Below, in pieces: positions 1-60,147 of a stretch of 64,000 bases of DNA. The notes under the pieces are model-generated. The model searched no databases. It was not told the origin of the DNA and saw nothing but the letters and a program-made list of their open reading frames with translations. The DNA comes from Anthoceros angustus (taxonomy: Eukaryota > Plantae > Anthocerotophyta): NCBI GenBank assembly GCA_010909165.1, contig MU008155.1, positions 2,418,001 to 2,482,000 on the forward strand, given 5' to 3'. The position numbers and the translations under genes were made by a program. Numbering within the stretch: the stretch's first letter is position 1; each line of letters starts with the position of its first letter.

Positions 1-897
1 GTAAGGTGGTGTTTAGTTGCTAGCTTGCACACTAATAGCAAGTTCTTGGTCATTGCAGCACGTGGAGACGCCATTAATGGTGAGCGGCTCTCCATCTTCC
101 CTTCCCTTCCCTATACGATGGCTTCACGATAAGCTCACATGCATAGAATAAATATTATTTTGATAAATTAAAATAATGTACAGATATAAACTAATATTTA
201 CATAAATCATGAATATTACTATTTTCATTTAGATATTATAAACTTAATCAGATTGTACTATAATAAATACTAAAATACAATATAGTAACCCTTTACCTAT
301 TGAAAAACTTATTTAATAATCTATTAATAAATAAAATCTCAAACTCATCGAAATATGGGACATGGGGCATGGAACTCGTTTTTCTATTTGGGCTATATAT
401 GTATGTGAGCCCCACCATCTATATTCAAACATGATATATCCAATCTCATTGTATGATAAAGAATACTATGGGACATAGTGCATGAACCACATCGAGAGCG
501 TCTCAAGGGGTCCCTTGAGTGCCGGTGCAATGATTACCTCGAAAGTGATTGTAAGGTGGTGTTTAGTTGCTAGCTTGCACACTAATAGCAAGTTCTTGGT
601 CATTGCAGCACGTGGAGGCGCCATTAATGGTGAGCGCTCTTCCCTTCCCTTCCCTATACGATGGCTTCACGATAAGCTCACATGCATAGAATAAATATTA
701 TTTTGATAAATTAAAATAATGTACAGATATAAACTAATATTTACATAAATCATGAATATTACTATTTTCATTTAGATATTATAAACTTAATCAGATTGTA
801 CTATAATAAATACTAAAATACAATATAGTAACCCTTTACCTATTGAAAAACTTATTTAATAATCTATTAATAAATAAAATCTCAAACTCATCGAAAT

Positions 898-1119
898 ATG
901 GGACATGGGGCATGGAACTCGTTTTTCTATTTGGGCTATATATGTATGTGAGCCCCACCATCTATATTCAAACATGATATATCCAATCTCATTGTATGAT
1001 AAAGAATACTATGGGACATAGTGCATGAACCCATTTTTCCTATTTGGGCTATATATGTATGTGAGCCCCACTATATTCAAACATCATATATCCAATCTTG
1101 ATGTATGCTAAAGAATATC
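898..1119. repeat. ~113-bp direct dimer (ATGGGACAT...TTTGGGCTATATATGTATGTGAGCCCCA...AAAGAAT); three copies at ~28911-29246
   Basis: ATGGGACAT starts at ~898 and ~1011. Each monomer holds a GGGCT..AGCCC inverted repeat around TATATA. Confidence 0.9.
930..1070 (+). promoter_or_regulatory. Candidate promoter of ORF-A (two TGGGCT site-II-like motifs, each followed by TATATA)
   Basis: TTTGGGCTATATAT occurs twice, ~230-345 bp upstream of the ORF-A ATG. Motif match only. Confidence 0.3.
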
Positions 1120-1276
1120 ATTATCACCCATTCTTTTGAATTTTATTAGAATGTTTAGTTTTCTCATCGGTTCTCTCTTGAGGTTATCATTAGTTTGATC
1201 TTTGTAGAGTTACCTATCCATATTCCTTTGGGTTCTTTCTTTATTCTTATTTGCCTTTGGTCCTTTCTAGTCTATT

Positions 1277-2290
1277 ATGGCTAATGATGATGCTCCGTTA
1301 GCGTTGTACCTTACACATGGGTGGACAGATTCCTAGAATCGGATGCCCACATTGGTTTCTACATTGAAGACGCAAGGAAGCATGAGGATGAGGCTGGTGA
1401 TGCTCCTTCCTTACCTTGGAACTTCCAAGCTAAAGACCCTTCCGGACCGCTTTCTAAGTATACCTTGAAGCTGGTAGACGTGGTCGATTTGATCATGGAA
1501 GTCAAGCAAAGAAGACCTCAACCACAGCCTCCCACCATGGCTGATCTAGAAAGGATGATGACGACTGTGGTGGCGGAAGCACCACCATCCCTAAGGCGCA
1601 ACAAAATAGCGAGCAATGGGAGTGAGGCGTCGCCACATGGTGATGGAGGAGGTCCGGACACGAGGTATCACGGAGTGCATTGGCATTCTATTCACAAGTC
1701 GATAATGTGTATCCGATGGCACGCTACGTGACTCACCTTCCAAGAAGTTCCACGAGTTCATTTGGGCGATTCGAAAAGGACATAGATGCAGCGGATTAAG
1801 GACTTGGTGCAAATCAAGTTGTTTTATGTGGCTTCAAGCGTCGAATACGAGTGAAGCTCAACTTCAAAGATCCCGCATCCTTAGAGACATATCTACGATT
1901 ACGCAGACGGATTGGGTGGCCATCACAGTTGGCGGAAGTAATAGGGTTTGTGAGGATGGAAGTTCAACAAAGCGCAAATTCTTCTCCGTAGTGCATGCGG
2001 AGGCCTTCCACATGGTGTGTATATCGGAGAAGAAGAGATGAAACAACTGCAGATGTGCCAAAAGATGCTCGTAGGAGACCACATATGAGGCTTTCGTTTT
2101 GAGAAAGTCAAGGCCAAATAGGTACAGTCCAAGTTGTTGAGGTTGAGGGGCACACCATTCTAGCACCAAAACCTACAATTGTTGGTATAAAAAGAGGAAG
2201 CTGGAAAAGCATCGTAGTAAAGGCGATCATAATGGGGGTACACTCAAGGAGCTCAATCATCCCTCACAGATTATTTGGTTGAGCTTGAAT
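1277..2290 (+). CDS. ORF-A, unknown protein of ~330 aa when stitched across copies (frameshifted in this assembly)
   Basis: Starts with TATTATGGCT after a T-rich leader. Protein-like segments recur in all copies: MANDDAPLALYLTHGW, FLESDAHIGFYIEDARKHEDE, SLPWNFQAKDPSGPLSKYTLKLVDVVDLIMEVKQRRPQP, MVMEEVRTRGITECIGILFTSR, VKLNFKDPASLETYL, EVIGFVRMEVQQ, QVVEVEGHTILAPKPTIVGIK. Stop position uncertain. Confidence 0.45.
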
Positions 2291-2399
2291 CACGAAGTTC
2301 GATTGGGTAGCTACAACACATAGCTGAGAAGTGCTCTGGCTCTCAGGCTGCGAGGAAGAAATCCTTGGTTCATCCATCCATCCGGCTCCGAACCCACAA

Positions 2400-2800
2400 G
2401 AAAGTACTCTAGCGCCTTGAGCTCACAAGAAAGTATTTGAGCGCCTTCAAACTCACGGGACCAATACTTTAGTGCCTTCCAACTCACAGGATAATAGTCT
2501 AGCGCCTTCAAACTCACGGGACCCATACTCCTCTCTTCCAACTTACGAGGATAATACTCTAGCGCCTTCAAACTCATAGAAAAATATTCTAGTGCCTTCC
2601 AACTCAGGATAATACTCTAGCGCCTTCAAACTCACAGGACCCATACTCGCCTTCCAACTTACGAGGATAATACTCTAGCGCCTTCAAACTCATAGAAAAA
2701 TATTCTAGTGCCTTCCAACTCACAGGATAATACTCTAGCGCCTTCAAACTCACGGAAAAATATATTTGGCTCCTTCTTAGATCCATTGTTAAATACTCTA
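2400..2800. repeat. 30-bp minisatellite (consensus GGATAATACTCTAGCGCCTTCAAACTCACA), expanded in this copy
   Basis: Tandem diverged monomers in fixed order. Other blocks at ~4272, 9368, 13598, 22606, 26520, 30545, 35540, 37286, 38895, 44401, 49155, 53058 and 58875. The - strand reads as 10-aa repeats LKALEYYPVS. Confidence 0.95.
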
Positions 2801-2919
2801 ACGCCTTGGACTCACACTAGGGAGTTCAACACGTCATGGCTCACTCACCGGGAGGTCACTATGTGAGAAACTTTGCCGAGCAATTGGAGCAACATAAGTC
2901 GCCAAGGGAGTGGATCGGC

Positions 2920-3170
2920 GCATTGGGAGAGGGAAAAGGGCATGAGGATCGGGAGAGAGAAGGGAAGGAAAGAGGTAGGTATGTAGAGAAGATATGGGTG
3001 AAAAAGGATAACATGAGAAAACAATATAAATATGGAAGATGAAGAGAAGGGAAAATGGGAAAATGGGAAGGGAGAAACAAAAGAAATGAGAGGATATGGA
3101 GAAATAGTAAAGAATCTTCCTCTTGAGCGAGGAATGTTTTATTGAAAGGCAAAAAAAAATGGTATATATA
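2920..3170. other. Purine-rich (GA) tract ending in A-run plus TGGTATATATA (representative)
   Basis: Strong strand asymmetry. On the - strand it reads TATATATA followed by a CT-rich stretch. Confidence 0.8.
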
Positions 3171-3198
3171 CGGCCGAGTGAGTTGTAAGCATCATCGA

Positions 3199-4030
3199 GC
3201 TTGAGAATGCCGAAACTTACTCAACTATATCAAATGCTATTAAACATTGTTTCGTCTTACCTTGCAACGTGCCTAAACCTCACTTTGATCAGCCTAAGAC
3301 CCCCATCTCCACAACACTCCCCTCGCGATCCGGTTCTTCGTTCTCGCGCCATGGCGTCCATCGGGCATGCTTCTCTGCAATGTTCTCGGCATCCTCTCGA
3401 CCATCCGGTGGCTTCTCAAGCTCGCGACTCACCCGATCTCAATGAGCCAAAAATTGAAAGCCTCGAGCAAGGGAGTAGCCAGCAGATCCGAAAAGAGCGC
3501 GGGTGTTCCAGCAAGAGCGCAGCTTGCGGTCGGCCGCAAGATGCATGGCGGGCGTAAGTATAGAAAGGTTTAGAATTGCGAACTCCAACCTTTGCCTCCG
3601 GATGACGGTGAGAAGAGCTTATGAAGAGTGGTGATCAAGGTGTCTTGGCGAGTCAACGTCTTCCCCTCAAGGTTGGGGAGCTCGAGCTCCATCACCCGGA
3701 TAAGCTTCCTTGCTCGTAGTCCTATACCTCTTACATGCTTCTCGTGGAGTACCTTGGTGTGCCTTGGTGAGCAGGTCGATTTATCGCCCTTGATGTCGAC
3801 ATCTTGGCCAAGCTCGCTTATGAGCAACCACATGGGATGAAATGGTGTTGTATCTCCACATGTTTGGTCCTTGTGTGCGAGGGGTTGGGTTGTAGGTCAT
3901 GGCAATTGCATCTTGATGGTCGCATAGTAGTTTGGTTGGTTGATCCTGCTCCTCACGGATGTCGCTCAGAATTGTCGAATCAAGGAATCTCCTTTTGCCG
4001 CTAGGGAAGTTCTTTGCATACTCCGGTGGA
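3199..4030 (-). mobile_element. Copia remnant in unit (LTR plus partial RNase H), truncated by a junction back into ORF-A
   Basis: PTKLLCDHQDAIAMTYNP RNase H motif; PPT CTTCCCCTCAA at ~3660. Confidence 0.85.
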
Positions 4031-4940
4031 GGGGCACACCATTCTAGCACCAAAACCTACAATTGTTGGTATAAAAAGAGGAAAATGGAAAAGCATACGG
4101 CGATCATAATGGGGTCAGATGATACCAAGGAGCTCAATCATCCCTCACAGTTATTTGGTTGAGCTTGCTTCAGTTCGATTGGGTGGCTACACCGCATAGC
4201 CGGTGAAGTGCTCGCTCTCGGACGCAGGAAGAAATCCTTGGTTCATCCATCCATCCGGCTCCGAACCCACAAGAAAGTACTCTAGCGCCTTGAGCTCACA
4301 AGAAAGTATTTGAGCGCCTTCAAACTCACGGACCAATACTTTAGTGCCTTCCAACTCACAGGATAATAGTCTAGCGCCTTCAAACTCACAGGACCCATAC
4401 TCTCGCCTTCCAACTTACGAGGATAATACTCTAGCGCCTTCAAACTCATAGAAAAATATTCTAGTGCCTTCCAACTCACAGGATAATACTCTAGCGCCTT
4501 CAAACTCACGGAAAAATATATTTGGCTCCTTCTTAGATCCATTGTTAAATACTCGCCCGGACTCACACTAGGGAGTTCAACACGTCATGGCTCACTCACC
4601 GGGAGGTCACTATGTGAGAAACTTTGCCGAGCAATTGGAGCAACATAAGTCGGGAGTGTGGATCGGCGCATTGGGAGAGGGAAAAGGGCATGAGGATCGG
4701 GAGAGAGAAGGGAAGGAAAGAGAGAGGTATGTAGAGAAGATATGGGTGAAAAAGGATAACATGAGAAAACAATATAAATATGGAAGATGAAGAAGGGAAA
4801 ATGGGAAAATGGGAAGGGAGAAACAAAAGAAATGAGAGGATATGGAGAAATAGTAAATCTTCCTCTTGAGCGAGGAATGTTTTATTGAAAGGCAAAAAAA
4901 AATGGTATATATACACGGCCGAGTGAGTTATAGCTATCGA

Positions 4941-5397
4941 TGTTGAGAATGCCGAAACTTACTCAACTATATCAAATGCTATTAAACATTGTTTCGTCTT
5001 ACCTTCGCGTGCCTAAACCTCACTTTGATCAGCCGTCTAAGACCCCCATCTCCACAACACTCCCCTGTTCGATCCGGTTCTTCGTTCTACGCCGCCATGA
5101 CGTCCATCGTGCATGCTTCTCTGCAATTTCCTCGGCATCCTCTCGACCATCCGGTGGCTTCTCAAGCTCGCGACTCACCCGATCTCAATGAGCCAAAAAT
5201 TGAAAGCCTCGAGCAAGGGAGTAGCCAGCAGATCCGAAAAGAGCGCGGATGTTCCGCAAGAGCTTGCGGTCGGCCGCAAGATGCATGGCGGGCGTAAGTA
5301 TAGAAAGGTTTAGAATTGCGAACTCCAACCTTTGCCTCCGGATGACGGTGAGAAGAGCTTATGAAGAGTGGTGATCAAGGTGTCTTGGCGGTCAACG
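4941..5397 (-). mobile_element. Putative 3' LTR (~457 bp) of the unit-embedded Copia (representative)
   Basis: Bounded by TGTTGA (4941) and TCAACG (5392-5397), and directly adjacent to a PPT-like TTGAGGGGAAG on the - strand that follows the RNase H C-terminus. Confidence 0.6.
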
Positions 5398-5398
5398 T

Positions 5399-5409
5399 CT
5401 TCCCCTCAA
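5399..5409 (-). other. Polypurine tract of the unit-embedded Copia
   Basis: The - strand reads TTGAGGGGAAG-A-CGTTGA, close to the common Copia TTGAGGGGGAG-TGTTGA junction. Confidence 0.6.
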
Positions 5410-5444
5410 GGTTCCGGGGAGCTCGAGCTCCATCACCCGGATAA

Positions 5445-6354
5445 GCTTCCTTGCTCAGTCCTATACCTCTTACATGCTTCTCGTGGAGTACCTTGGGTAC
5501 TGCCTTGGTGAGCGTGTCGATTTGTTATCGCCAGATGTCGACATCGTAGGCGCTGCTGAGCAACCACCGTGGGATGAAATGGTGTTGTATCTCCACATGT
5601 TTGGTCCTTGTGTGGTTGGGTTGTAGGTCATTGCATCTTGATGGTCGCATAGTAGTTTGGTTGGTTGATCCGCTCCTCCGGATGTCGCCAGAATTGTCGA
5701 ATCCAAGGAATCTCCTTTTGCCGCTAGGGAAGTTGCATACTCCGCCGGTGGAGGCATAGCAAGCAATTGCATCCCTGTGAGACTAACCCGTTGTTGAGGA
5801 TCATGCGGTAGCTGCGGTAGACTTGCGTGCATCCGGATCTCCCGATGCATTTGAGTAGGAGGTTAACTAGTACAAGCTTCTGGAAGTGGTGTTTTGTATA
5901 CAAGTCCAAGGGATTTGCAGCCCTTCAAGTAGCGGAGGATGCGCTTGACGCTAGTCCAGGGCTCTCCCATGGTTGGAGAGGTATCTTGATGCAATATTCA
6001 CGACTGTGACATGTCCGCTGGTCCACATTGCCAAATAGAGTAGGCTAGCCATACAGCCTCGGTAGGGCACTTGGGACATCTCATGAGCTTCTTACGGGTT
6101 GTGGGGCGATCCATGGATAGCTTCTCGGAAGCAATAGGAGTGGAGACGGGCTTGGCATCGCTCGGCTTCAATCTCTCCAAGACAGTCGGCCAGTGTCGCG
6201 GATGAACAAGGCGCTGCAGAGGGTGTGCATGAACGCACATCGAGAGCGCATCAAGGGGTCCCTTGAGTGCGACGGTGCAATGATTACCTACGAAAGTGAT
6301 TGTAAGGTGGTGTTTAGTTGCTAGCTTGCACACTAATAGCAAGTTCTTGGTCAT
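5445..6354 (-). pseudogene. Ty1/Copia pol 3' fragment (C-terminal RT plus RNase H)
   Basis: Motifs across copies: ERLKxSDAKPVSTP, EEAHEMSQVP, VNIASRYLSNHG, VKRILRYLKG..LGLVY, GDPDARKST, SSTEAEY, LLCDHQDAI, RTKHVEIQHHFI, LTKA.KVLHEKHVRGIGL. Confidence 0.9.
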
Positions 6355-7025
6355 TGCAGGCGCGTGGAGAACGCCATTAATGGTGAGCTCTCCATCTTCC
6401 CTTCCCTTCCCTATGATGGCTTCACGATAAGCTCACATGCATAGAATAAATATTATTTTGATAAATTAAAATAATGTATGATATAAACTAATATTTACAT
6501 AAATCATGAATATTACTATTTTCATTTAGATATTATAAACTTAATCAGATTGTACTATAATAAATACTAAAATACAATATAGTAACCCTTTACCTATTGA
6601 AAACTTATTTAATAATCTATTAATAAATAAAATCTCAAACTCATCGAAATATGGGACATGGGGCATGGAACTCGTTTTTCTATTTGGGCTATATATGTAT
6701 GTGAGCCCCACCATCTATATTCAAACATGATATATCCAATCTCATTGTATGATAAAGAATACTATGGGACATAGTGCATGGAACCCATTTTTCCTATTTG
6801 GGCTATATATGTATGTGAGCACTATATTCAAACATCATATATCCAATCTTGATGTATGCTAAAGAATATCATTATCACCCATTCTTTTGAATTTTATTAG
6901 AATGTTTAGTTTTCTCGCCGGTTCTCTCTTGAGGTTATCATTAGTTTGATCTTTGTAGTTACCTATCCATATTCCTTTGGGTTCTTTCTTTATTCTTATT
7001 TGCCTTTGGTCCTTTCTAGTCTATT

Positions 7026-7980
7026 ATGGCTAATGATGATGCTCCGTTAGCGTTGTACCTTACACATGGGTGGAATGATTCCTAGAATCGGATGCCCACA
7101 TTGGTTTCTACATTGAAGACGCAAGGAAGCATGAGGATGAGGTGGTGACGCTCCTTCCTTACCTTGGAACTTCCAAGCTAAAGACCCTTCCGACCGCTTT
7201 CTAAGTATACCTTGAAGTTGGTAGGCGTGGTCGATTTGATCATGGAAGTCAAGCAAAGAAGACCTCAACCACCTCCCACCATGGTGATCTAGAAAGGATG
7301 ATGGCGATCGTGGTGGCGGGCACACCATCCCTAAGGCGCAACAAAATAGCGAGCATTGGGAGTGAAGACGTCGACTGCGGGCATGGTGATGGAGGAGGTC
7401 CGGACCACGAGGTATCACGGAGTGCATTGGCATTCTATTCACAAGTCGTATAATGTGTATCGATGGCACGCTACGTCAACTCACCAACTCGTGAAGAAGT
7501 TCCACCAGTTCATTTGGGGCGGTTGAAAGGACATAGATGCGGCCATTCGGGACTTGGTGCAAATCAAGTTGTTTTATGTGGCTTCAAGCGTCGAATCGAG
7601 TGAAGCTCAACTTCAAAGATCCCGCATCCTTAGAGACATATCTCGATTACGTGGATTGGGTGGCCATCACAGTTGGAAGTAATAGGGTTTGTGAGGATGG
7701 AAGTTCAACAAAAGCGCAAATTCTTCTCCGTAGTGCATGCGGAGGCCTTCCACATGGTGTGTATATCGGAGAAGAAGAGATGAAACAACTGCAGATGTGC
7801 CAAAAGATGCTCGTAGGAGACCACATATGAGGCTTTCGTTTTGAGAGCAGTCAAGGCCAAATAGGTGCAGTCCAGAAGTTGTTGAGGTTGAGGGGCACAC
7901 CATTCTAGCACCAAAACCTACAATTGTTGGTATAAAAAGAGGAAGTGGAAAAGCATCAATAGTAAAGCGATCATAATGTA
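7026..7980 (+). CDS. ORF-A copy (3' end joined back to spacer)
   Basis: Same sequence as 1277-2290. Confidence 0.4.
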
Positions 7981-8266
7981 AATGTATGATAAAGAATACT
8001 ATGGGACATAGTGCATGGAACCCATTTTTCCTATTTGGGCTATATATGTATGTGAGCCCCACTATATTCAAACATCATATATCCAATCTTGATGTATGCT
8101 AAAGAATATCATTATCACCCATTCTTTTGAATTTTATTAGAATGTTTAGTTTTCTCATCGGTTCTCTCTTGAGGTTATCATTAGTTTGATGTCAGAGAGT
8201 TACCTATCCATATTCCTTTGGGTTCTTTCTTTATTCTTATTTGCCTTTGGTCCTTTCTAGTCTATT

Positions 8267-9262
8267 ATGGCTAATGATGATGCTCCGTTAGCGTTGTACC
8301 TTACACATGGGTGGATGATTCCTAGAATCGGATGCCCACATTGGTTTCTACATTGAAGACGCAAGGAAGCATGAGGATGAGGTGGTGACGCTCCTTCCTT
8401 ACCTTGGAACTTCCAAGCTAAAGACCCTTCCGGACCGCTTTCTAAGTATACCTTGAAGTTGGTAGACGTGGTCGATTTGATCATGGAAGTCAAGCAAAGA
8501 AGACCTCAACCATGCCCTCCCACCATGGTGATCTAGAAAGGATGATGACGATCGTGGTGGAAGCACCACCATCCCTAAGGCGCAACAAAATAAATTGGGA
8601 GTGAAGACGTCTTTAATGTGCATGGTGATGGAGGAGGTCCAACGAGGTATCACGAGTGCATTGGCATTCTATTCACAAGTCGTATAATGTGTATCGATGG
8701 CACGCCACGTCGACTCACTCGGCAAGAAGTTCCACCAGTTCATTTGGGGCGTCAAAAGGACATAGATGCGATTCTGGGACTTGGTGCAAATCAAGTTGTT
8801 TTATGTGGCTTCAAGCGAATACGAGTGAAGCTCAACTTCAAAGATCCGCATCCTTAGAGACATATCTACAGGCTCGCAACATCGGATTGGGTGGCCATCA
8901 CAGTTGGCGAAGTAATAGGGTTTGTGAGGATGGAAGTTCAACAAAAGCGCAAATTCTTCTCCGTAGTGCATGCGGAGGCCTTCCACATGGTGTGTATATC
9001 GGAGAAGAAGAGATGAAACAACTGCAGATGTGCCAAAAGATGCTCGTAGGGAGACCACATATGAGGCTTTCGTTTTGAGAACAAGGCCAAATAGGTAGGT
9101 CCAAGTTGTTGAGGTTGAGGGGCACACCATTCTAGCACCAAAACCTACAATTGTTGGTATAAAAAGAGGAAGTGGAAAAGCATACGACCAAAGGCGATCA
9201 TAATGGGGTCAGATGATACCAAGGAGCTCAATCATCCCTCACAGTTATTTGGTTGAGCTTGA
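8267..9262 (+). CDS. ORF-A copy
   Basis: Same sequence as 1277-2290. Confidence 0.4.
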
Positions 9263-11860: not shown

Positions 11861-12476
11861 ATGGCTTCACGATAAGCTCACATGCATAGAATAAATATTA
11901 TTTTGATAAATTAAAATAATGTTGGATATAAACTAATATTTACATAAATCATGAATATTACTATTTTCATTTAGATATTATAAACTTAATCAGATTGTAC
12001 TATAATAAATACTAAAATACAATATAGTAACCCTTTACCTATTGAAAAACTTATTTAATAATCTATTAATAAATAAAATCTCAAACTCATCGAAATATGG
12101 GACATGGGGCATGGAACTCGTTTTTCTATTTGGGCTATATATGTATGAGCCCCACCATCTATATTCAAACATGATATATCCAATCTCATTGTATGATAAA
12201 GAATACTATGGGACATAGTGCATGGAACCCATTTTTCCTATTTGGGCTATATATGTATGTGAGCCCCACTATATTCAAACATCATATATCCAATCTTGAT
12301 GTATGCTAAAGAATATCATTATCACCCATTCTTTTGAATTTTATTAGAATGTTTAGTTTTCTCATCGGTTCTCTCTTGAGAGGTTATCATTAGTTTGATC
12401 TTTGTAGAGTTACCTATCCATATTCCTTTGGGTTCTTTCTTTATTCTTATTTGCCTTTGGTCCTTTCTAGTCTATT

Positions 12477-49825: not shown

Positions 49826-51336
49826 CGTTGATCACAAGAAACTTACTCAACTATATCAAATGCTATTAAACATTGTTTTACGTCTTACCTTGGCGTGCCT
49901 AAACCTCACTTTGATCAGCCCGTCTAAGACCCCCATCTCCACAACACTCCCCTCGTTCTTGATCCGAGTTCTTCGTTCTCGCTCGCCATGGCGTCCATCG
50001 GGCATGCTTCTGCGGTGTTCCTCGGCATCCTCTCGACCATCCGGTGGCTTCTCAAGCTCGCGACTCACACGATCTCGGCTATGAGCCAAAAATTGAAAGC
50101 CTCGAGCAATGGGTAGCCGAGCCTGAGATCCGAAAAGAGCGCAGCCTGTTCAACACGCAAGAGCCGCGATCGGCCATAAGATGCATGGCGGGCGTAAGTA
50201 TAGAAAGGTTTAGAATTGCGAACTCCAACCTTTGCCTCCGGATGGCGGTGAGAAGAGCTTATGAAGAGTGGTGATCAAGGTGTCTTGGCGATCAACGTCT
50301 TCCCTCAAGGTTCGCGAGCTCGAGCTCCATCACCCGGATAAGCTTCCTTGCTCAGTTGATCCTGTACCTCTTACATGCTTCTAGGAGTACCTTGGTGTGC
50401 CTTGGTGAGCGGGTCGATTTATTATCGCGATGTCGACATCATGTAGGCGCGAGGCTAGCTTATGAGCAACCACGTGGGATGAAATGGTGTTGTATCTCCA
50501 CATGTTTGGTCCTTGTGTGCGGGGTTGGGTTGTAGGTCATGGCAATTGCATCTTGATGGTCGCATAGTAGTTTGGTTGGTTGATCCTGCTCCTCCGGATG
50601 TCGCTCGGGGAATTGTCGAATCCAAGGAATCTCCTTTTGCCGCTAGGGAAGTTCTTTGCATACTCCGCCGGTGGAGGACAGGCTACGATCAACAATTGCA
50701 TCCCGGAGACTAACCCGTTGTTGAGGATCATGCGGTAAAAGGCTGCAGTAGACTTGCGTGCATCCGGATCCTCACTTGATGCATTTGAGTAGGAGGTTAA
50801 CTAGTACAAGCTTCTTTGGAAGTGGTGTTTTGTATACAAGTCCAAGGGTTTGCAGCCCTTCAAGTAGCGGAGGATGCGCTTGACGCTAGTCCATGGGCTC
50901 TCCCATGGTTGGAGAGGTATCTTGATGCAATATTCACACTGTGACATGCGGCACGGTCACATTGCCAAATAGAGTAGGCTAGCCATGCAGCCTCAGAACT
51001 TGGGACATCTCATGAGCTTCTTACAGGTTGTGGGGCGGTCATCGGCGGATAGCTTCTCGAAGCAATAGGGAGAGGCAGGCTTGGCATCGCTCGCTTCAAT
51101 CTCTCAAGTCGGCCGGTGTCCCCGAGCGGATGAACAAGCGCCAGGTATGCATGAGCGCACATCGAGAGCGTCTGAAGGGTCCCTTGAGTGCCGACGGTGC
51201 AATGATTACCTACGAAAGTGATTGTAAGGTGGTGTTTAGTTGCTAGCTTGCACACTAATAGCAAGTTCTTGGTCATTCAGGTACGTGGAGGCATCGATTA
51301 ATGGTGAGCGGCTCTCCATCTTCCTTCCCTTCCCTA
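49826..51336 (-). mobile_element. Copia RT-RH-LTR remnant
   Basis: Same sequence as other units. Confidence 0.85.
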
Positions 51337-51954
51337 TCGATGGCTTCACGATAAGCTCACATGCATAGAATAAATATTATTTTGATAAATTAAAATAATG
51401 TACAGATATAAACTAATATTTACATAAATCATGAATATTACTATTTTCATTTAGATATTATAAACTTAATCAGATTGTACTATAATAAATACTAAAATAC
51501 AATATAGTAACCCTTTACCTATTGAAAAACTTATTTAATAATCTATTAATAAATAAAATCTCAAACTCATCGAAATATGGGACATGGGGCATGGAACTCG
51601 TTTTTCTATTTGGGCTATATATGTATGAGCCCCACCATCTATATTCAAACATGATATATCCAATCTCATTGTATGATAAAGAATACTATGGGACATAGTG
51701 CATGGAACCCATTTTTCCTATTTGGGCTATATATGTATATGAGCTATTTATATTCAAACATCATATATCCAATCTTGATGTATGCTAAAGAATATCATTA
51801 TCACCCATTCTTTTGAATTTTATTAGAATGTTTAGTTTTCTCATCGGTTCTCTCTTGAGGTTATCATTAGTTTGATCTTGTGTAGAGTTACCTATCCATA
51901 TTCCTTTGGGTTCTTTCTTTATTCTTATTTGCCTTTGGTCCTTTCTAGTCTATT

Positions 51955-52954
51955 ATGGCTAATGATGATGCTCCGTTAGCGTTGTACCTTACACATGGGT
52001 GGAATGATTCCTAGAATCGGATGCCCACATTGGTTTCTACATTGAAGGCCTTGAGGCATGAGGATGAGGGGTGGCGCTCCTTCCTTACCTTGGAACTTCC
52101 AAGCTAAAGACCCTTCGGACCGCTTTCTAAGTATACCTTGAAGTTGGTAGGCGTGGTCGATTTGATCATGGAAGTCAAGCAAAGAAGACCTCAACCACCT
52201 CCCACCATGGTGATCTAGAAAGGATGATGGCAGTAATAGTGGCGGGCACCACCATCCCTAAGGCGCAACAAAATAGCGCGCAGTGGGAGTGAAGACGTCG
52301 ACTTAACGGGCATGGTGATGGAGGAGGTCCGGACACGGTATCACAGTGCATTGGCATTCTATTCACAAGTCGTATAATGTGTATCCGATGGCACGCTACA
52401 TTAAGCTCGCTCAAGAAGTTCCACCAGTTCATTTGGGCGATTCGAAAGGACATAGATGCAGATTCGGGACTTGGTGCAAATCAAGTTGTTTTATGTGGCT
52501 TCAAGCGTCGAATACGAGTGAAGCTCAACTTCAAAGATCCCGCATCCTTAGAGACATATCTACGATTACACTGCGTAGGATTGGGTGGCCATCACAGTTG
52601 AAGTAATAGGGTTTGTGAGGATGGAAGTTCAACAAAGCGCAAATTCTTCTCCGTAGTGCATGCGAGGCCTTCCACATGGTGTGTATATCGGAGAAGAAGA
52701 GATGAAACAAGCTGCGGATGTGCCAAAAGATGCTCGTGGGAGACCACATATGAGGCTTTCGTTTTGAGAAACGTTGAGGCCAATAGATGCACGGTCAATA
52801 GTTGTTGAGGTTGAGGGGCACACCATTCTAGCACCAAAACCTACAATTGTTGGTATAAAAGAAATTTGGAAAAACATCACGGTAGTAAAGCGATCATAAT
52901 GAACATGTGATGCCGAGCTCAATCATCCCCTCACAGTTATTTGGTTGAGCTTGA
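51955..52954 (+). CDS. ORF-A copy
   Basis: Same sequence as 1277-2290. Confidence 0.4.
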
Positions 52955-53746
52955 GCTTCAAGGTTCATTGGGTGGCTGCATAAGCGAGAAGTGCAGCACG
53001 GCTCTCGAGCTGCGGAAGAAATCCTTGGTTCATCCATCCATCCACTCCGAACCCACAAGAAAGTACTCTAGCGCCTTGAGCTCACAAGAAAGTATTTGAG
53101 CGCCTTCAAACTCACGGGACCAATACTTTAGTGCCTTCCAACTCACGGGATAATAGTCTAGCGCCTTCAAACTCACAGGACCCATACTCTCGCCTTCCAA
53201 CTTACGAGGATAATACTCTAGCGCCTTCAAACTCATAGAAAAATATTCTAGTGCCTTCCAACTCACGGATAATACTCTAGCGCCTTCAAACTCACGAGAA
53301 AAATATATTTGGCTCCTTCTTAGATCCATTGTTAAATACTCCTGCTTCTTGGACTCACACTAGGGAGTTCAACACGTCATGGCTCACTCACACCGGGGAG
53401 GTCACTATGTGAGAAACTTTGCGAGCAATTGGAGCAACATAAGTCGCCAAGGGAGTGTGGATCGGCGCATTGGGAGAGGGAAAAGGGCATGAGGATCGGG
53501 AGACAGAAGGGAAGGAAAGAGAGGTATGTAGAGAAGATATGGGTGAAAAAGGATAACATGAGAAAACAATATAAATATGGAAGATGAAGAGAAGGGAAAA
53601 TGGGAAAATGGGAAGGAGAAACAAAAGAAATGAGAGGATATGGAGAAATAGTAAAGAATCTTCCTCTTGAGCGAGGAATGTTTTATTGAAACCAAAAAAA
53701 AATGGTATATATACACGGCCGAGTGAGTTATGGAATCATCGAGGCG

Positions 53747-55255
53747 AGTTAGAATCAAACTTACTCAACTATATCAAATGCTATTAAACATTGTTTTACG
53801 TCTTACCTTCATGACGTGCCTAAACCTCACTTTGATCGACCATCTAAGACCCCCATCTCCACAACACTCCCCTCGTTCGATCCGTTCTTCGTTCTCGCTA
53901 CATGGCGTCCATCGGGCATGCTTCTGCAGGCATTCCTCGGCATCCTCTCGACCATCTGGTGGCTTCTCAAGCTCGCGACTCACGATCTCGCTATGAGCCA
54001 AAAATTGAAAGCCTCGAGCAAGCTGGAGTAGCCGGGCCTGAGATCCAGGCGCACCCGGTGTTAGACACATGGAAGAGCCGCTTGCGGTCGGCGCAGATGC
54101 ATGGCGGGCGTAAGTATAGAAAGGTTTAGAATTGCGAACTCCAACCTTTGCCTCCTGGATGGCGGTGAGAAGAGCTTATGAAGAGTGGTGATCAAGGTGT
54201 GTGGCGAGGTCAACGCCTTCCCTCAAGGTTCGCCGAGGGAGCTCGAGCTCCATCACCCGGATAAGCTTCCTTGCTCGAGTCCTATACCTCTTACATGCTT
54301 CTCGTGGAGTACCTTGACATGCCTTGGTGCGAGGTCCGATTTGTTATCGCCAATGATCGACATCATGGGCTGCTAAACGCTATGAGCAACCACCGTGGGA
54401 TGAAATGGTGTTGTATCTCCACATGTTTGGTCCTTGTGTGCGGGGTTGGGTTGTAGGTCATGGCAATTGCATCTTGATGGTCGCATAGTAGTTTGGTTGG
54501 TTGATCCGCCTCCTCGGATGTCGCCGAGAATTGTCGAATCCAAGGAATCTCCTTTTGCCGCTAGGGAAGTTGCTGGCATCCGCCGGTGGAGGCGGGCACC
54601 TGCAAGCAATTGCATCCCTGTGAGACTAACCGTTGTTGAGGATCATGCAAGAAGTCATGCGGTAGACTTACATCATCCGGATCTCCCCGATGCATTTGAG
54701 TAGGAGGTTAACTAGTACAAGCTTGTCGGAAGTGGTGTTTTTGTATACAAGTCCAAGGGATTTGCAGCCCTTCAAGTAGCGGAGGATGCGCTGACGCTAG
54801 TCCAAAGGGCTCTCCCATGGTTGGAGAGGTATCTTGATGCAATATTCACACTGTGACATATGTCCGCCCGTCCACATTGCCAAATAGAGTAGGCTAGCCT
54901 ACTCCAGAGGGCACTTGGGACATCTCATGAGCTTCTTCCGAGTTGTGGGGCGTCATCGCGGATAGCTTCTCGGAAGCAATAGGAGTGGAGGCGGCTTGGC
55001 ATCGCTCGGCTTCAATCTCTCCAGTCGACGGTCGGCGGTGTCCCCGACGGATGAACAGAAGCCGTGTATGCATGAACCGCACATCGAGAGCGTCATCAAG
55101 GGGTCCCTTGAGTGCGACGGTGCAATGATTACCTACGAAAGTGATTGTAAGGTGGTGTTTAGTTGCTAGCTTGCACACTAATAGCAAGTTCTTGGTCATT
55201 GCACGTGAGAACGCCATTAATGGTGAGCGCTCTCCATCTTCCCTTCCCTTCCCTA
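53747..55255 (-). mobile_element. Copia RT-RH-LTR remnant
   Basis: Same sequence as other units. Confidence 0.85.
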
Positions 55256-55871
55256 TACGATGGCTTCACGATAAGCTCACATGCATAGAATAAATATTAT
55301 TTTGATAAATTAAAATAATGTAGATATAAACTAATATTTACATAAATCATGAATATTACTATTTTCATTTAGATATTATAAAGTTAATCAGATTGTACTA
55401 TAATAAATACTAAAATACAATATAGTAACCCTTTACCTATTGAAAAACTTATTTAATAATCTATTAATAAATAAAATCTCAAACTCATCGAAATATGGGA
55501 CATGGGGCATGGAACTCGTTTTTCTATTTGGGCTATATATGTATGAGCCCCACCATCTATATTCAAACATGATATATCCAATCTCATTGTATGATAAAGA
55601 ATACTATGGGACATAGTGCATGGAACCCATTTTCCTATTTGGGCTATATATGTATGTGAGCCCCACTATATTCAAACATCATATATCCAATCTTGATGTA
55701 TGCTAAAGAATATCATTATCACCCATTCTTTTGAATTTTATTAGAATGTTTAGTTTTCTCATGGTTCTCTCTTGAGAGGTTATCATTAGTTTGATCTGTC
55801 AGAGTTACCTATCCATATTCCTTTGGGTTCTTTCTTTATTCTTATTTGCCTTTGGTCCTTTCTAGTCTATT

Positions 55872-57160
55872 ATGGCTAATGATGATGCTCCGTTAGCGTT
55901 GTACCTTACACATGGGTGGATGATTCCTAGAATCGGATGCCACATTGGTTTCTACATTGAAGACGCAAGGAAGCATGAGGATGAGGTCAGGTGGCGCCCT
56001 TCCTTACCTTGGAACTTCCAAGCTAAAGACCCTTCCGGACCGCTTTCTAAGTATACCTTGAAGTTGGTAGACGTGGTCGATTTGATCATGGAAGTCAAGC
56101 AAAGAAGACCTCAACCACCTCCCACCATGGTCGATCTAGAAAGGATGATGACGTATGTAGGTGGAAGCACCACCATCCCTAAGGCGCAACAAAATAGCGC
56201 GAGCACCGGGAGTGAAGACGCGCTTTACAGCATGGTGATGGAGGAGGTCCGGACACGAGGTATCACGAGTGCATTGGCATTCTATTCACAAGTCGTATAA
56301 TGTGTATCGATGGCACGCTACGTGCCGACTCGCTCGTGAAGAAGTTCCACCAGTTCATTTGGGGCGATTCGAAAGGACATAGATGTCCCAGTTCGACTTG
56401 GTGCAAATCAAGTTGTTTTATGTGGCTTCAAGCGTGAATACGAGTGAAGCTCAACTTCAAAGATCCTCGCATCCTTAGAGACATATCTACAGGTGCTGCC
56501 GGATTGGGTGGCCATCACAGATTGGCGGAAGTAATAGGGTTTGTGAGGATGGAAGTTCAACAAAGCGCAAATTCTTCTCCTGTGCGTGCATCCGGATCTC
56601 CGCCCGATGCATTTGAGTAGGAGGTTAACTAGTACAAGCTTCTTTGGAAGTGGTGTTTTTGTATACAAGTCCAAGGGATTTGCAGCCCTTCAAGTAGCGG
56701 AGGATGCGCAGCTAGTCCGATGGGCTCTCCCATGGTTGGAGAGGTATCTTGATGCAATATTCACACTGTGACATGGCCCGGTCCACATTGCCAAATAGAG
56801 TAGGCTAGACGGCCTCAGAGGGGCACTTGGGACATCTCATGAGCTTCTTCCGGGTTGTGGGGCGTCATCGGCGGATAGCTTCTCGGAAGCAATAGGAGTG
56901 GAGACGGCTTGGCATCGCTCGGCTTCAATCTCCAGTCGGCCGCAGTGTCCACAGCGGATGAACAGGCGCCCGGGTGCATGGCGCACATCGAGGCGTCAAG
57001 GGGTCCCTTGAGTGCCAGACGTTGCAATGATTACCTACAGTGATTGTAAGGTGGTGTTTAGTTGCTAGCTTGCACACTAATAGCAAGTTCTTGGTCATTG
57101 CAGCACGTGAGAACGCCATTAATGGTGAGCGCTCTCCATCTTCCCTTCCCTTCCCTATCG
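55872..57160. other. Deleted unit: 5' part of ORF-A (55872-~56588) fused directly to the Copia RT part
   Basis: Junction TTCTCCTGTGCGTGCATCCGGATC; ~2 kb of the unit is missing. Confidence 0.8.
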
Positions 57161-57781
57161 ATGGCTTCACGATAAGCTCACATGCATAGAATAAATATTA
57201 TTTTGATAAATTAAAATAATGTACAGATATAAACTAATATTTACATAAATCATGAATATTACTATTTTCATTTAGATATTATAATAAACTTAATCAGATT
57301 GTACTATAATAAATACTAAAATACAATATAGTAACCCTTTACCTATTGAAAAACTTATTTAATAATCTATTAATAAATAAAATCTCAAACTCATCGAAAT
57401 ATGGGACATGGGGCATGGAACTCGTTTTTCTATTTGGGCTATATATGTATGTGAGCCCCACCATCTATATTCAAACATGATATATCCAATCTCATTGTAT
57501 GATAAAGAATACTATGGGACATAGTGCATGGAACCCATTTTCCTATTTGGGCTATATATATGTATGTGAGCCCCACTATATTCAAACATCATATATCCAA
57601 TCTTGATGTATGCTAAAGAATATCATTATCACCCATTCTTTTGAATTTTATTAGAATGTTTAGTTTTCTCATGGTTCTCTCTTGAGGAGGTTATCATTAG
57701 TTTGATCTGTAGAGTTACCTATCCATATTCCTTTGGGTTCTTTCTTTATTCTTATTTGCCTTTGGTCCTTTCTAGTCTATT

Positions 57782-58773
57782 ATGGCTAATGATGATGCTC
57801 CGTTAGCGTTGTACCTTACACATGGGTGGGATTCTAGAATCGGATGCCACATTGGTTTCTACATTGAAGACGCAAGGAAGCATGAGGATGAGGTGGTGAC
57901 GCTCCTTCCTTACCTTGGAACTTCCAAGCTAAAGACCCTTCCGGACCGCTTTCTAAGTATACCTTGAAGTTGGTAGACGTGGTCGATTTGATCATGGAAG
58001 TCAAGCAAAGAAGACCAACCTCCCACCATGGTCGATCTAGAAAGGATGATGACGTATGTAGGTGGAAGCACCACCATCCCTAAGGCGCAACAAAATAGCG
58101 CGAGCACCGGGAGTGAAGACGCGCTTTACAGCATGGTGATGGAGGAGGTCCGTATACGAGGTATCACGAGTGCATTGGCATTCTATTCACAAGTCGTATA
58201 ATGTGTATCGATGGCACGCTACGTCCGACTCCATCGTGAAGAAGTTCCACCAGTTCATTTGGGGCGATTCGAAAGGACATAGATGTCCCAGTTCGACTTG
58301 GTGCAAATCTTGTTTTATGTGGCTTCAAGCGTGAATACGAGTGAAGCTCAACTTCAAGATCCTCGCATCCTTAGAGACATATCTACAGGTGCTGCCGGAT
58401 TGGGTGGCCATCACAGATTGGCGGAAGTAATAGGGTTTGTGAGGATGGAAGTTCAACAAAGCGCAAATTCTTCTCCTGTGCGTGCATGGAGGCCTTCCAC
58501 ATGGTGTGTGTATCAGAAGAAGAGATGAAACAACCGCAGATGTGCCAAAAGATGCTCGTAGGAGACCACATATGAGGCTTCGTTTTGAGAACACTAGGCC
58601 AATAGGTACGGTCCAAAGAAGTTGTTGAGGTTGAGGGGCACCATTCTAGCACCAAAACCTACAATTGTTGGTATAAAAAGAGGAAGCCGAAAAATACGAC
58701 CGTAGAAGCGATCATAATGAAATGGGATGATACCAAGGAGCTCAATCATCCCTCACAGTTATTTGGTTGAGCT
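57782..58773 (+). CDS. ORF-A copy
   Basis: Same sequence as 1277-2290. Confidence 0.4.
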
Positions 58774-59890
58774 GTGCTCACCAAGTTCCAGTTGGAGTCA
58801 GCCTGCATAGCCGGTGAGTGCCTCGGCTGGCGGAAGAAATCCTTGGTTCATCCATCCATCCGGCTCCGAACCCACAAGAAAGTACTCTAGCGCCTTGAGC
58901 TCACAAGAAAGTATTTGCGCCTTCAAACTCACGGACCAATACTAGTGCCTTCCAACTCACAGGATAATAGTCTAGCGCCTTCAAACTCACAGGACCCATA
59001 CTCTCTTCCAACTACGAGGATAATACTCTAGCCTTCAAACTCATAGAAAAATATTCTAGTGCCTTCCAACCTGCTGTGATAATACTCTACGCCTTCAAAC
59101 TGTAAAAATATATTTGGCCTTCTTAGATCCATTGTTAAATACTCTAACGCCTTGACTCACACTAGGAGTTCAACACGCCATGGCTCACTCACCTCGGGAG
59201 GTCACTATGTGAGAAACTTTGCCTAATTGAGCAACATAAGTCGCCAAGGGAGTGTGGATCGCGCATTGGGAGAGGGAAAAGGCATGAGGATCGAGAGGGA
59301 GAGAAGGAAGAGAGAGGTATGTAGAGAAGATATGGGTGAAAAAAGGATAACATGAGAAAACAATATAAATATGAAGAAGAGAAGGGGAAAATGGGAAAAT
59401 GGGAAGGAGAAACAAAAGAAATGAGAGGATATGGAGAAATAGTAAAGAATCTTCCTCTTGGAGGAATGTTTTATTGAAAGGCAAAAAAAATGGTATATAC
59501 ACGCCGAGTGAGTTGTAATCGTTCATCGAGCGCTGAGAATGTCAAACTTACTCAACTATATCAAATGCTATTAAACATTGTTTTACGCCTTACCTTCATG
59601 AACGTGCCCTAAACCTCACTTTGATCACCAGCCTAAGACCCCCATCTCCACAACACTCCCCTCGTTCGATCCGAAGTTCTTCGTTCTACGCCATGATGGC
59701 GCCCATCGGGCATGCTTCTGCTGTTCCTCGGCATCCTCTCGACCATCCGGTGGCTTCTCAAGCTCGCGACTCACCGATCTCACTATGAGCCAAAAATTGA
59801 AAGCCTCGAGCAATGGAGTAGCCAGCATGATCCGAAAAGAGCGCAGCCTGTTCAACACGCAAGAGCCGCAGCCGCAAGATGCATGGCGGA

Positions 59891-60144: not shown

Positions 60145-60147
60145 TCA

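What the first reader, a model, noticed from the sequence alone, without database searches (positions are those of the whole stretch)
1..59890. 3.9-kb composite macrosatellite that amplifies an unknown ORF together with a captured Copia 3' end
Seen: at least 13 head-to-tail copies of [AT spacer | ORF-A | 30-bp minisatellite | GA tract | inverted Copia LTR-PPT-RH-RT]. The Copia part lacks gag, PR, INT and an intact YVDD, so it cannot have retrotransposed in this form. The unit therefore appears to have been amplified at the DNA level (unequal crossover or rolling circle). Inference: this could be a gene-bearing macrosatellite (analogous in layout to D4Z4/DUX4) or a young retrotransposon-derived centromeric or sex-chromosome satellite. 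Two further retroelements have inserted into it.
Basis: partly seen in the sequence, partly recalled or inferred. Interest (0 to 1): 0.8.

Follow-up and report, generated by a model that had tools for sequence, protein, structure and literature searches.

The report
Decayed Copia-derived 3.9-kb tandem repeat
A land-plant (bryophyte-like) chromosome carries a long head-to-tail array of a 3.9-kb unit built from a dead piece of a Copia jumping gene plus non-coding DNA; this is a known kind of repeat, and the "unknown gene" said to be inside it does not hold up.

Summary
The tandem array is real. Positions 1-59890 hold about 14 unit-equivalents of a ~3.9-kb unit, all in one orientation. Only 6 units are canonical; the rest are out-of-register partial units. 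A 5.1-kb unclassified insert (16551-21691) interrupts the array. A separate Copia element (59891 to the window end) has inserted into the unit's LTR.

The Copia part (minus strand) is confirmed and refined. It runs protease/pre-integrase beta-barrel fragment, then RT C-terminus, RNase H, stop, polypurine tract, LTR with a TATA box. No tRNA-Met primer-binding site was found.

"ORF-A" is not supported as a gene:
- No copy is intact.
- Stop codons in all six frames match shuffled sequence.
- A majority consensus does not restore an ORF.
- Pfam, word search, Atlas and a 1.84-billion-protein HMMER search gave no real relative.

Copies differ by 5-8% plus many indels, so the array is not young.

Best reading (0.6): a compound long-monomer satellite derived from a retrotransposon and amplified at the DNA level, comparable to Sobo of Solanum. 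Main rival (0.25): it began as a shared-LTR tandem of a defective Copia.

The scan has noted other Copia-derived tandem arrays and an LTR chain elsewhere in this genome (s1-300236, s1-253414, s1-305923).

Two things remain unexplained: the nearly invariant AT-rich spacer, and strand-asymmetric transitions.

The parts
1..16550 (+). Left block of the tandem array. It starts mid-unit at the window edge and includes out-of-register junctions at about 492, 4049, 7991 and 11373.
   Evidence: blastn of the window against reference unit 25013-28910
16551..21691 (.). 5141-bp unclassified insert inside one unit (unit position about 582/586). It holds a 350-bp x3 tandem at 99-100% identity (19414-20464). 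It has no LTR, TIR or TE protein domain. The flanks carry a diverged TTGAAGT.TGGT-like duplication of about 10-11 bp.
21692..59890 (+). Right block of the tandem array. It ends where a separate Copia LTR has inserted into the unit's LTR (unit position about 2530).
25013..28910 (+). Reference canonical unit (3898 bp). The other uninterrupted canonical units are 12096-15982, 29024-32919, 42921-46810 and 51576-55493. One more is split by the insert (15983-16550 + 21692-25012).
25013..25234 (.). Pair of ~110-bp subrepeats at the unit start (three copies at 28911-29244). This is part of the nearly invariant AT-rich segment.
   Evidence: TRF; a 26-mer from it occurs 13 times against 0 expected; divergence 0.7%
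25385..26520 (+). 'ORF-A' stretch (unit about 372-1500). There is no intact ORF, the stop density equals shuffles in all six frames, and no homologues were found.
26520..26810 (.). 30-bp minisatellite (6-12 copies per unit, variable in number)
   Evidence: TRF
26900..27645 (-). LTR-like segment of the Copia fragment. Read on the minus strand it starts TGACT at 27645, has TATATATA at 27164-27157 followed by an AATAAA-like signal, and then a CT-rich tract (GA tract on the + strand, about 26930-27110). The 3' end is not defined, and no tRNA-Met PBS follows it.
   Evidence: sequence reading; PBS scan
27649..27657 (-). Polypurine tract GAGGGAAGG, 3 nt upstream of the LTR start
   Evidence: sequence reading, conserved in 5 units
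27689..28450 (-). Decayed Copia pol 3' part: RT C-terminus (AKPVSTP-type motif) and RNase H (KRILRYLKG and TKHVEIQHHF motifs), ending at the pol stop codon. RNase H comes last, which is the Copia domain order.
   Evidence: translations; Atlas nearest clusters are 'RxLR effector 161-like' and an RVT_2-bearing cluster, scores 0.90-0.92; stop codons depleted on the minus strand only
28451..28690 (-). Fragment of the Copia protease/pre-integrase beta-barrel (VLHAP.MTKNLL..CKL type), joined directly to the RT C-terminus. Integrase and the RT core are deleted.
   Evidence: Pfam PF22936 Pol_BBD E=0.005, below its cut-off, on the copy at 6001-6432; translations
28691..28910 (.). AT-rich spacer (16% G+C), nearly invariant among copies
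59891..64000 (+). Separate Copia element inserted into the array: LTR 59891-60147 (TG...CA), exact tRNA-Met PBS 60148-60159, gag 61075-61503, pre-integrase 62258-62443, SH3-like 62907-63236, RVT_2 start 63375-63869. It runs off the window, and its coding pieces lie in separate frames.

Best explanation
The array is a compound, long-monomer satellite ('macrosatellite') derived in part from a retrotransposon.

Proposed history:
1. A Copia element lost its integrase and RT core by internal deletion, and lost everything 5' of the protease beta-barrel. This piece lay next to about 2.3 kb of non-coding DNA: an AT-rich stretch with 110-bp subrepeats, the so-called ORF-A stretch, and a 30-bp minisatellite.
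2. This 3.9-kb segment was duplicated head to tail and then expanded at the DNA level. The route could have been unequal sister-chromatid exchange or replication template switching, possibly with rolling-circle copies.
3. Afterwards the copies decayed. They picked up point changes concentrated at CG/CHG sites, many small indels, out-of-register junctions and later insertions.

The unit carries no functional gene.

Shown: the array, its anatomy, the lack of coding signal in ORF-A, the lack of a tRNA-Met PBS, and the degree of decay. Inferred: the order of events and the amplification mechanism.
For: - Array and unit structure.
- Copia-derived pieces lie collinear with a Copia polyprotein on the minus strand and end in stop-PPT-LTR. 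Stop codons are depleted on the minus strand only in that part.
- No tRNA-Met-type PBS lies at a conserved place in the unit, while the neighbouring ordinary Copia has an exact one.
- The unit lacks gag, catalytic protease, integrase and the RT core.
- Thirteen out-of-register junctions, all in the same orientation, have 4-25 bp overlaps or 1-9 bp fillers. This shows DNA-level rearrangement inside the array.
- ORF-A is non-coding by every test. Indel lengths show no 3n excess.
- Published precedent: compound monomers made of part of an LTR retrotransposon plus a genomic tandem repeat, such as Sobo at 4.7 kb (PMC8091179, citing Tek et al. 2005), and retrotransposon-derived tandem repeats (PMC3648361, PMC7004042).
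Against: - The LTR's 3' boundary could not be fixed, so a degenerate or non-Met PBS cannot be excluded.
- Each unit has exactly one LTR with its PPT on the correct side. That is also the layout of a shared-LTR tandem retrotransposon.
- The same genome is reported by this scan to hold other shared-LTR Copia arrays.
- Neither end of the array is visible in the window.
- Described long-monomer satellites are usually far more homogeneous (up to 99%) than this array (92-95%).
- The amplification mechanism itself is not observable from one assembly.
Confidence: 0.6

Rival explanations
1. The array began as a tandem LTR retrotransposon, that is, alternating LTR and internal regions with one shared LTR per junction. 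The element would be a non-autonomous, internally deleted Copia whose 5' internal part (PBS, leader, gag) has been replaced or has decayed beyond recognition. It would have formed at or after a single insertion, by LTR-LTR illegitimate recombination or read-through or multimeric cDNA. Later it was enlarged and scrambled by DNA-level events.
For: - There is one LTR-like segment per unit, with the PPT correctly placed upstream of it.
- The Copia pieces are collinear, and the beta-barrel-to-RT-C-terminus fusion looks like a deletion derivative rather than a random 3' fragment.
- The 2.3 kb between the LTR and the beta-barrel is of the order of a leader plus gag plus protease N-terminus.
- Tandem LTR-RT structures are reported as common in plants (PMC11899658), and long TRIM arrays are known (PMC7215508).
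- Scan notes report shared-LTR Copia arrays and a nine-LTR chain elsewhere in this genome. These notes are unchecked.
Against: - No tRNA-Met PBS occurs anywhere at a conserved unit position; the best candidates have 3 mismatches, no more than chance.
- There is no TG...CA pair with terminal inverted repeats.
- The stretch that should be gag gives no gag or zinc-knuckle hit on the minus strand, no tblastx match to the neighbouring Copia, and no stop-codon depletion.
- The array ends and any target-site duplication are not visible.
Confidence: 0.25
2. A gene-bearing macrosatellite. On this view ORF-A is a real, multicopy orphan protein gene (D4Z4/DUX4-like layout) whose frame is hidden by sequencing noise.
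For: - Open pieces of up to 146-153 aa recur in several copies, and one begins with ATG downstream of an AT-rich, TATA-containing stretch.
- The first 400 bp of the stretch are better conserved than the rest.
Against: - No copy is intact.
- Summed stop counts over the three + frames equal dinucleotide shuffles, both for the whole stretch and for its first 430 bp.
- The majority consensus of 19 segments gives at most 131 aa.
- Indels are shared between copies and show no 3n excess.
- A perfect 350-bp tandem in the same contig argues against heavy sequencing noise.
- There is no Pfam family, no word-search hit, and an Atlas recognition score of 1569, in the range typical of shuffled or reversed sequences.
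- The exhaustive HMMER search returned only a translated satellite, which is a spurious hit.
Confidence: 0.04
3. An assembly artefact. On this view a much shorter locus has been over-expanded or mis-joined by a long-read assembler.
For: Many out-of-register junctions and a high ratio of indels to substitutions (about 0.45) could come from mis-assembly of noisy reads.
Against: - Copies differ at hundreds of sites, and many variants are shared by 2-3 copies. They are therefore distinct sequences, not one copy repeated.
- Two unrelated insertions have clean boundaries.
- Scan notes place more of the array at least 24.5 kb upstream.
Confidence: 0.05

Closest known systems
Sobo satellite of Solanum bulbocastanum (4.7-kb compound monomer; Tek et al. 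2005, as described in PMC8091179)
   Same: [quoted passage not shown]
   Different: Sobo monomers are highly homogeneous (up to 99%) and recently amplified. Here copies are 92-95% identical, rearranged and interrupted. The retroelement part here is Copia coding sequence plus PPT plus LTR, not LTR only. The host is a bryophyte-like plant.
Tandem LTR-retrotransposon structures with shared internal LTRs (Morales-Diaz et al. 2025, PMC11899658); Cassandra TRIM arrays (PMC7215508)
   Same: One LTR per repeat unit alternating with an 'internal' region, with the PPT next to the LTR. The elements forming such arrays can be defective or non-autonomous (the Cassandra TRIMs lack gag and pol; PMC7215508).
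   Different: No PBS was found, the LTR termini are not definable, the flanking target-site duplication is not visible, and most of the 'internal' region is not recognisably retroelement-derived.
CRM1TR / CRM4TR of maize (Sharma et al. 2013, PMC3648361) and Ogre-derived satellites (Vondrak et al. 2019, PMC7004042)
   Same: Tandem repeats born from LTR/UTR parts of retrotransposons, expanded by recombination or gene conversion, with later retrotransposon insertions.
   Different: Those monomers are 0.1-1.4 kb and derive wholly from one Ty3/gypsy element. This one is 3.9 kb, is based on Copia, and has more than half of the unit of unknown origin.
D4Z4/DUX4-type gene-bearing macrosatellite (comparison recalled from general knowledge)
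   Same: Unit size of a few kb in a head-to-tail array.
   Different: The defining intact ORF per unit is absent here.

Membership tests
Long-monomer compound satellite partly derived from an LTR retrotransposon (Sobo-like) | Many head-to-tail copies of one kilobase-scale monomer | tested here: met
   About 14 unit-equivalents, all in one orientation
Long-monomer compound satellite partly derived from an LTR retrotransposon (Sobo-like) | The monomer joins a retrotransposon fragment to unrelated or tandem-repeat DNA | tested here: met
   Copia beta-barrel fragment, RT C-terminus, RNase H, PPT and LTR, plus a 30-bp minisatellite, 110-bp subrepeats and 1.1 kb of unassigned DNA
Long-monomer compound satellite partly derived from an LTR retrotransposon (Sobo-like) | High homogeneity of monomers (up to about 99%) | tested here: not met
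   92-95% identity plus more than 100 indels per pair. Only the AT-rich spacer is about 99% identical.
Long-monomer compound satellite partly derived from an LTR retrotransposon (Sobo-like) | Genome-wide abundance or a cytological block | not testable with these tools
   Needs the whole genome, read depth or FISH
Tandem LTR retrotransposon (shared-LTR array) | Alternating LTR and internal region, one LTR per junction | tested here: inconclusive
   One LTR-like segment per unit, with a TATA box and a PPT upstream, but its 3' end cannot be placed
Tandem LTR retrotransposon (shared-LTR array) | The internal region starts with a PBS next to the LTR and ends with a PPT | tested here: not met
   The PPT is present. 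No tRNA-Met PBS was found within 3 mismatches at a conserved position beyond chance level. Other tRNA primers were not testable.
Tandem LTR retrotransposon (shared-LTR array) | The array starts and ends with LTRs and is flanked by one target-site duplication | not testable with these tools
   The left end lies outside the window. The right edge at 59890 is created by another Copia's insertion.
Gene-bearing macrosatellite (D4Z4/DUX4-like) | An intact protein-coding ORF in the repeat unit | tested here: not met
   Longest open piece is 153 aa; stop density equals shuffles; the consensus does not restore an ORF
Gene-bearing macrosatellite (D4Z4/DUX4-like) | The encoded protein belongs to a recognisable family or has homologues | tested here: not met
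   Pfam, word search, Atlas and a 1.84-billion-protein HMMER search were all negative or spurious
Autonomous Ty1/Copia element | gag, protease, integrase, RT and RNase H between two LTRs, with PBS and PPT | tested here: not met
   The unit has only a beta-barrel fragment, the RT C-terminus, RNase H, a PPT and one LTR. The neighbouring element at 59891-64000 does meet the 5' half of this definition.
Centromeric or sex-chromosome satellite | CENH3 association, or sex-linked or centromeric location | not testable with these tools
   No positional or chromatin data are available
Helitron-generated tandem array | 5' TC and 3' hairpin plus CTRR termini at the unit junction | tested here: inconclusive
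   None seen on reading the AT-rich junction region. No formal Helitron scan was available.

The most novel reading that the evidence does not exclude
The ~0.7-kb AT-rich spacer with its 110-bp subrepeats may be the selected or actively homogenised core of the repeat. It stays about 99% identical across copies while the rest of the unit decays five to eight times faster. It could be a binding platform for centromeric or other chromatin proteins, or a replication origin. On that reading the array would be a functional chromosome structure. This genome would then repeatedly build such structures from defective Copia elements; the scan has noted several independent Copia-derived arrays in it.
Probability: 0.1. 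Interest if true: 0.6.

Novelty: new member of a known kind. Interest (0 to 1): 0.3.

Why it matters
Satellites born from transposons are one way that new heterochromatin, and sometimes new centromeres, arise. Examples with kilobase-long compound monomers are few, and those retrieved here all come from seed plants. A Copia-based example in a bryophyte-like genome, next to other Copia-derived arrays, adds a data point on how often such repeats form and by what route. It also serves as a caution: an apparent 'amplified orphan gene' inside such a unit can be an illusion made of chance open stretches. The uneven decay within the unit (nearly invariant AT-rich spacer, CG/CHG-centred hot spots, strand-biased transitions) could be used to study methylation-linked mutation in plant heterochromatin.

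Tried and rejected
ORF-A as a gene
- Pfam on 15 + strand and minus-strand pieces: nothing.
- Word-index protein search on two pieces: nothing.
- Atlas: recognition 1569, no usable hit.
- Exhaustive HMMER search of the N-terminal piece: one hit, P0001. This is itself a translated tandem repeat matched 11 times by a 21-residue stretch, so I rejected it as spurious.
- An AP2-like resemblance I saw by eye (YHGV..., EEAGKAYD...NHP) was rejected. Pfam AP2 does not hit even at E<=10, the two halves lie about 600 bp apart, and the second half is read in a minority frame.
- The deaminase-like HAE...C..C of scan note s1-306023 is seen in only one of three open frames, with no family support.

ORF-A stretch as reversed Copia gag
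- A CCHC-like string on the minus strand does not fit the canonical spacing.
- No gag or zinc-knuckle Pfam hit and no tblastx match to the neighbouring Copia.

Primer-binding site
- The tRNA-Met pattern with up to 3 mismatches gives fewer hits than chance, and none is convincing inside the unit.
- Other candidate TGG... strings could not be matched to any tRNA; the window holds no tRNA gene.

Other searches
- RNA families: none in the window.
- Related DNA elsewhere: two conserved 26-27-mers have no match in metagenome contigs. A unit ORF is not on record in the assembly collection. The RNase H piece gave no word-search hit and no solved-structure hit.

Ideas dropped
- Excess of duplications over deletions among junctions: dropped, because in a circularly permuted unit a backward jump is equivalent to a deletion that crosses a unit boundary.
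- Sequencing noise as the cause of copy differences: weakened by the 99-100% identical 350-bp tandem in the same contig and by variants shared among copies.
- Higher-order repeat structure: none. Copy relationships are star-like, with only two adjacent pairs slightly closer, and divergence does not correlate with distance.


Full report
**Observation**

Tandem Repeats Finder and a self-comparison show that the window is dominated by one repeat. I mapped the whole window onto a reference unit (25013-28910, 3898 bp). Positions 1-16550 and 21692-59890 consist entirely of this unit in + orientation, about 54.7 kb or 14 unit-equivalents.

Five units are complete and uninterrupted: 12096, 25013, 29024, 42921 and 51576. 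A sixth is complete but split by a 5141-bp insert (16551-21691). The other pieces are partial units joined out of register at 13 junctions. These junctions show 4-25 bp of overlap or 1-9 bp of filler. One small junction (unit 3213 to 3155) occurs twice.

The array starts mid-unit at the window edge. Scan notes place more of it at least 24.5 kb upstream. There a separate Copia element begins: LTR 59891-60147 with TG...CA ends, and an exact tRNA-Met primer-binding site at 60148. Its gag, pre-integrase, SH3-like and RVT_2 domains are confirmed by Pfam. That element has landed inside the unit's own LTR, so the true end of the array is not visible.

**Anatomy of the unit**

Read on the + strand, the unit has this order:
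- two (once three) 110-bp subrepeats;
- the stretch called ORF-A;
- a 30-bp minisatellite of variable copy number;
- a GA-rich tract;
- the Copia-derived part in reverse orientation;
- a 220-bp spacer of 16% G+C.

On the minus strand the Copia part reads in the order of a Copia polyprotein. It starts with a short piece of the beta-barrel that lies between protease and integrase (VLHAP.MTKNLL type). Pfam Pol_BBD hits it at E=0.005, below the family cut-off. This piece is joined directly to the RT C-terminus (AKPVSTP type). RNase H follows, with the characteristic KRILRYLKG and TKH.EI..HF motifs. Then come the pol stop codon, a polypurine tract (GAGGGAAGG, 27657-27649) and an LTR-like segment that starts TGACT and has a TATA box and an AATAAA-like signal.

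RNase H as the last domain before the PPT is the Copia order. Two tool results support the assignment. The protein-language-model search places the RT/RH piece nearest to clusters labelled 'RxLR effector 161-like' and to a cluster in which 12% of members carry RVT_2. From my own knowledge, 'RxLR effector 161-like' is a common automatic label for Copia RT/RH fragments. Stop codons are also depleted on the minus strand of this part only. Pfam has no model for this region and gave nothing. The word-index and PDB searches were blank as well.

The fragment is an internally deleted Copia (integrase and RT core removed), not a plain 3' end.

**ORF-A**

This is the part of the finding that fails.
- No copy has an intact frame. 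The longest open pieces are 144-153 aa, and different copies are open in different frames.
- Summed over the three + frames, which tolerates frameshifts, the number of stop codons equals that of dinucleotide-preserving shuffles. This holds for the whole 1.1-kb stretch (48-56 observed, 53-56 expected) and for its best-conserved first 430 bp. The minus strand behaves the same way.
- A majority consensus over 19 segments, built only inside a script, gives at most 131 aa.
- Indels are often shared by two or three copies and show no excess of multiples of three.
- Nothing was found by Pfam or by the word-index search.
- The Atlas recognition score of 1569 is in the range typical of shuffled or reversed sequences.
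- The exhaustive HMMER search of 1.84 billion representatives returned one protein. That protein is itself a translated tandem repeat, hit eleven times by a 21-residue stretch. I regard the hit as spurious.

The open stretches are what chance gives in a repeat present in about 15 related copies.

**Age and decay**

Canonical units differ pairwise by 5-8% in substitutions, with 104-130 gap openings. Copy relationships are star-like. Only two adjacent pairs are slightly closer, and there is no higher-order periodicity.

The differences are very unevenly spread.
- The AT-rich spacer plus subrepeats (unit 3600-3898 and 1-400) differ from the majority by 0.7-1.1%. ORF-A, LTR and RH/RT differ by 4.6-5.8%.
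- Within those parts, the differences sit in small hypervariable patches between invariant runs of 50-100 bp.
- Seventy-three per cent of all differences lie within 3 bp of a CG or CHG, although such positions cover only 37% of the unit.
- Divergence at A/T sites also follows local G+C content.

This is not simply poor consensus quality. A 350-bp x3 tandem with 53% G+C, inside the 5.1-kb insert on the same contig, is 99-100% identical, and many variants are shared between copies.

Transitions are also strand-biased. There are 143 biallelic sites with purine-purine changes on the + strand against 67 with pyrimidine-pyrimidine changes, where composition predicts about 1.07:1.

I can offer only inference for these patterns. 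Methylation-linked mutation of heterochromatic repeat DNA may account for the hot spots. Transcription from the LTR along the minus strand may account for the strand bias. The near-invariance of the spacer is unexplained. Whatever the cause, the array is not young.

**Mechanism**

Two routes could give one LTR per unit.

A dead Copia fragment and its neighbouring DNA were duplicated and expanded at the DNA level. In its favour:
- The unit lacks every function needed for retrotransposition.
- No tRNA-Met PBS is present at any conserved unit position, although the neighbouring Copia has a perfect one.
- No TG...CA termini or terminal inverted repeats can be placed.
- The 2.3 kb that would have to be leader plus gag shows no gag signal on either strand.
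- The many microhomology junctions show that DNA-level rearrangement has been active in the array.
- Compound monomers of this kind are documented. [quoted passage not shown] Retrotransposon-derived tandem repeats such as CRM1TR and CRM4TR are another example (PMC3648361).

The second route is a tandem LTR retrotransposon with shared LTRs, reported as common in plants (PMC11899658). In its favour:
- The PPT is correctly placed.
- The Copia pieces are collinear.
- The internal deletion looks like that of a non-autonomous derivative.
- Scan notes, which I could not check, describe other shared-LTR Copia arrays and a nine-LTR chain in this genome.

The two routes are not exclusive, because an array could start the second way and grow the first way. 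I give 0.6 to the compound-satellite reading and 0.25 to a tandem LTR-retrotransposon origin. Small weights go to a real ORF-A gene (0.04) and to an assembly artefact (0.05).

**Comparison and novelty**

The array works like, and is best filed with, retrotransposon-derived long-monomer satellites. It departs from described members in four ways: a Copia coding-plus-LTR component, low homogeneity, heavy rearrangement, and a bryophyte-like host. It fails the defining test of a gene-bearing macrosatellite. It does not meet the PBS criterion of a tandem LTR retrotransposon, and the end criteria for that family are untestable here. Centromeric or sex-chromosome association cannot be judged.

I could not compare the unit with a plant repeat library, so I cannot exclude that the assembly's authors have already described it. 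The paper searches found no such description. I rate it a new member of a known kind, of modest interest. The more interesting residue is the uneven, strand-biased decay and the invariant spacer.

**Other points**

- The 5.1-kb insert has no LTRs, terminal inverted repeats or transposon domains. Its flanks carry a diverged duplication of about 10-11 bp. Its class is open, so 'two further retroelements' is only half verified.
- Nothing suggests a human or animal origin for the contig.
- No consensus of the Copia-derived part was built.
- The ORF-A consensus stayed inside a script and was not printed or sent to any tool.

Noticed in passing
window 16551-21691: A 5141-bp G+C-rich insert (about 50-53% G+C, strongly negative GC skew) sits inside one unit. 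It has no LTR, TIR or TE protein domain. It holds a 350-bp tandem in 3 copies at 99-100% identity (19414-20464), with a fourth, 93% identical copy just upstream. Its flanks show a diverged duplication of about 10-11 bp. Its class is unknown.
   Followed up: partly
window 59891-64000: A separate Copia element with a 257-bp LTR (TG...CA), an exact tRNA-Met PBS, and gag, pre-integrase, SH3-like and RVT_2 domains. Its coding pieces lie in separate frames, so it too is probably decayed. It has inserted into the LTR of the last visible array unit and runs off the window.
   Followed up: partly
array units, e.g. 25013-28910 (unit positions 3600-3898 and 1-400 against the rest): The AT-rich spacer and 110-bp subrepeats are about 99% identical among copies, while the rest of the unit differs five to eight times more. 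Differences cluster in small patches next to CG/CHG sites.
   Followed up: partly
six canonical units (12096, 15983+21692, 25013, 29024, 42921, 51576): Transitions are strand-asymmetric: 143 purine-purine sites against 67 pyrimidine-pyrimidine sites on the + strand, although composition is nearly balanced. The cause is unknown.
   Followed up: partly
window junctions near 492, 4049, 7991, 11373, 33941, 34494, 36432, 38890, 40563, 41118, 42191, 48230, 56596: Out-of-register joins between partial units, all in the same orientation, with 4-25 bp overlaps or 1-9 bp fillers. The 1020-to-479 join occurs twice in a row, and the 3213-to-3155 join occurs twice, 1.6 kb apart.
   Followed up: partly
protein P0001: The only database 'relative' of ORF-A is a 631-aa predicted protein that is itself a translated ~57-aa tandem repeat. 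This shows how satellite translations in protein databases can produce inflated E-values.
   Followed up: yes
same genome, other windows (scan notes s1-300236, s1-253414, s1-305923): The scan has noted other Copia-derived tandem arrays with one shared LTR per junction, and a nine-LTR chain 5.7 kb upstream of this window. The genome seems prone to building arrays from defective LTR elements.
   Followed up: no
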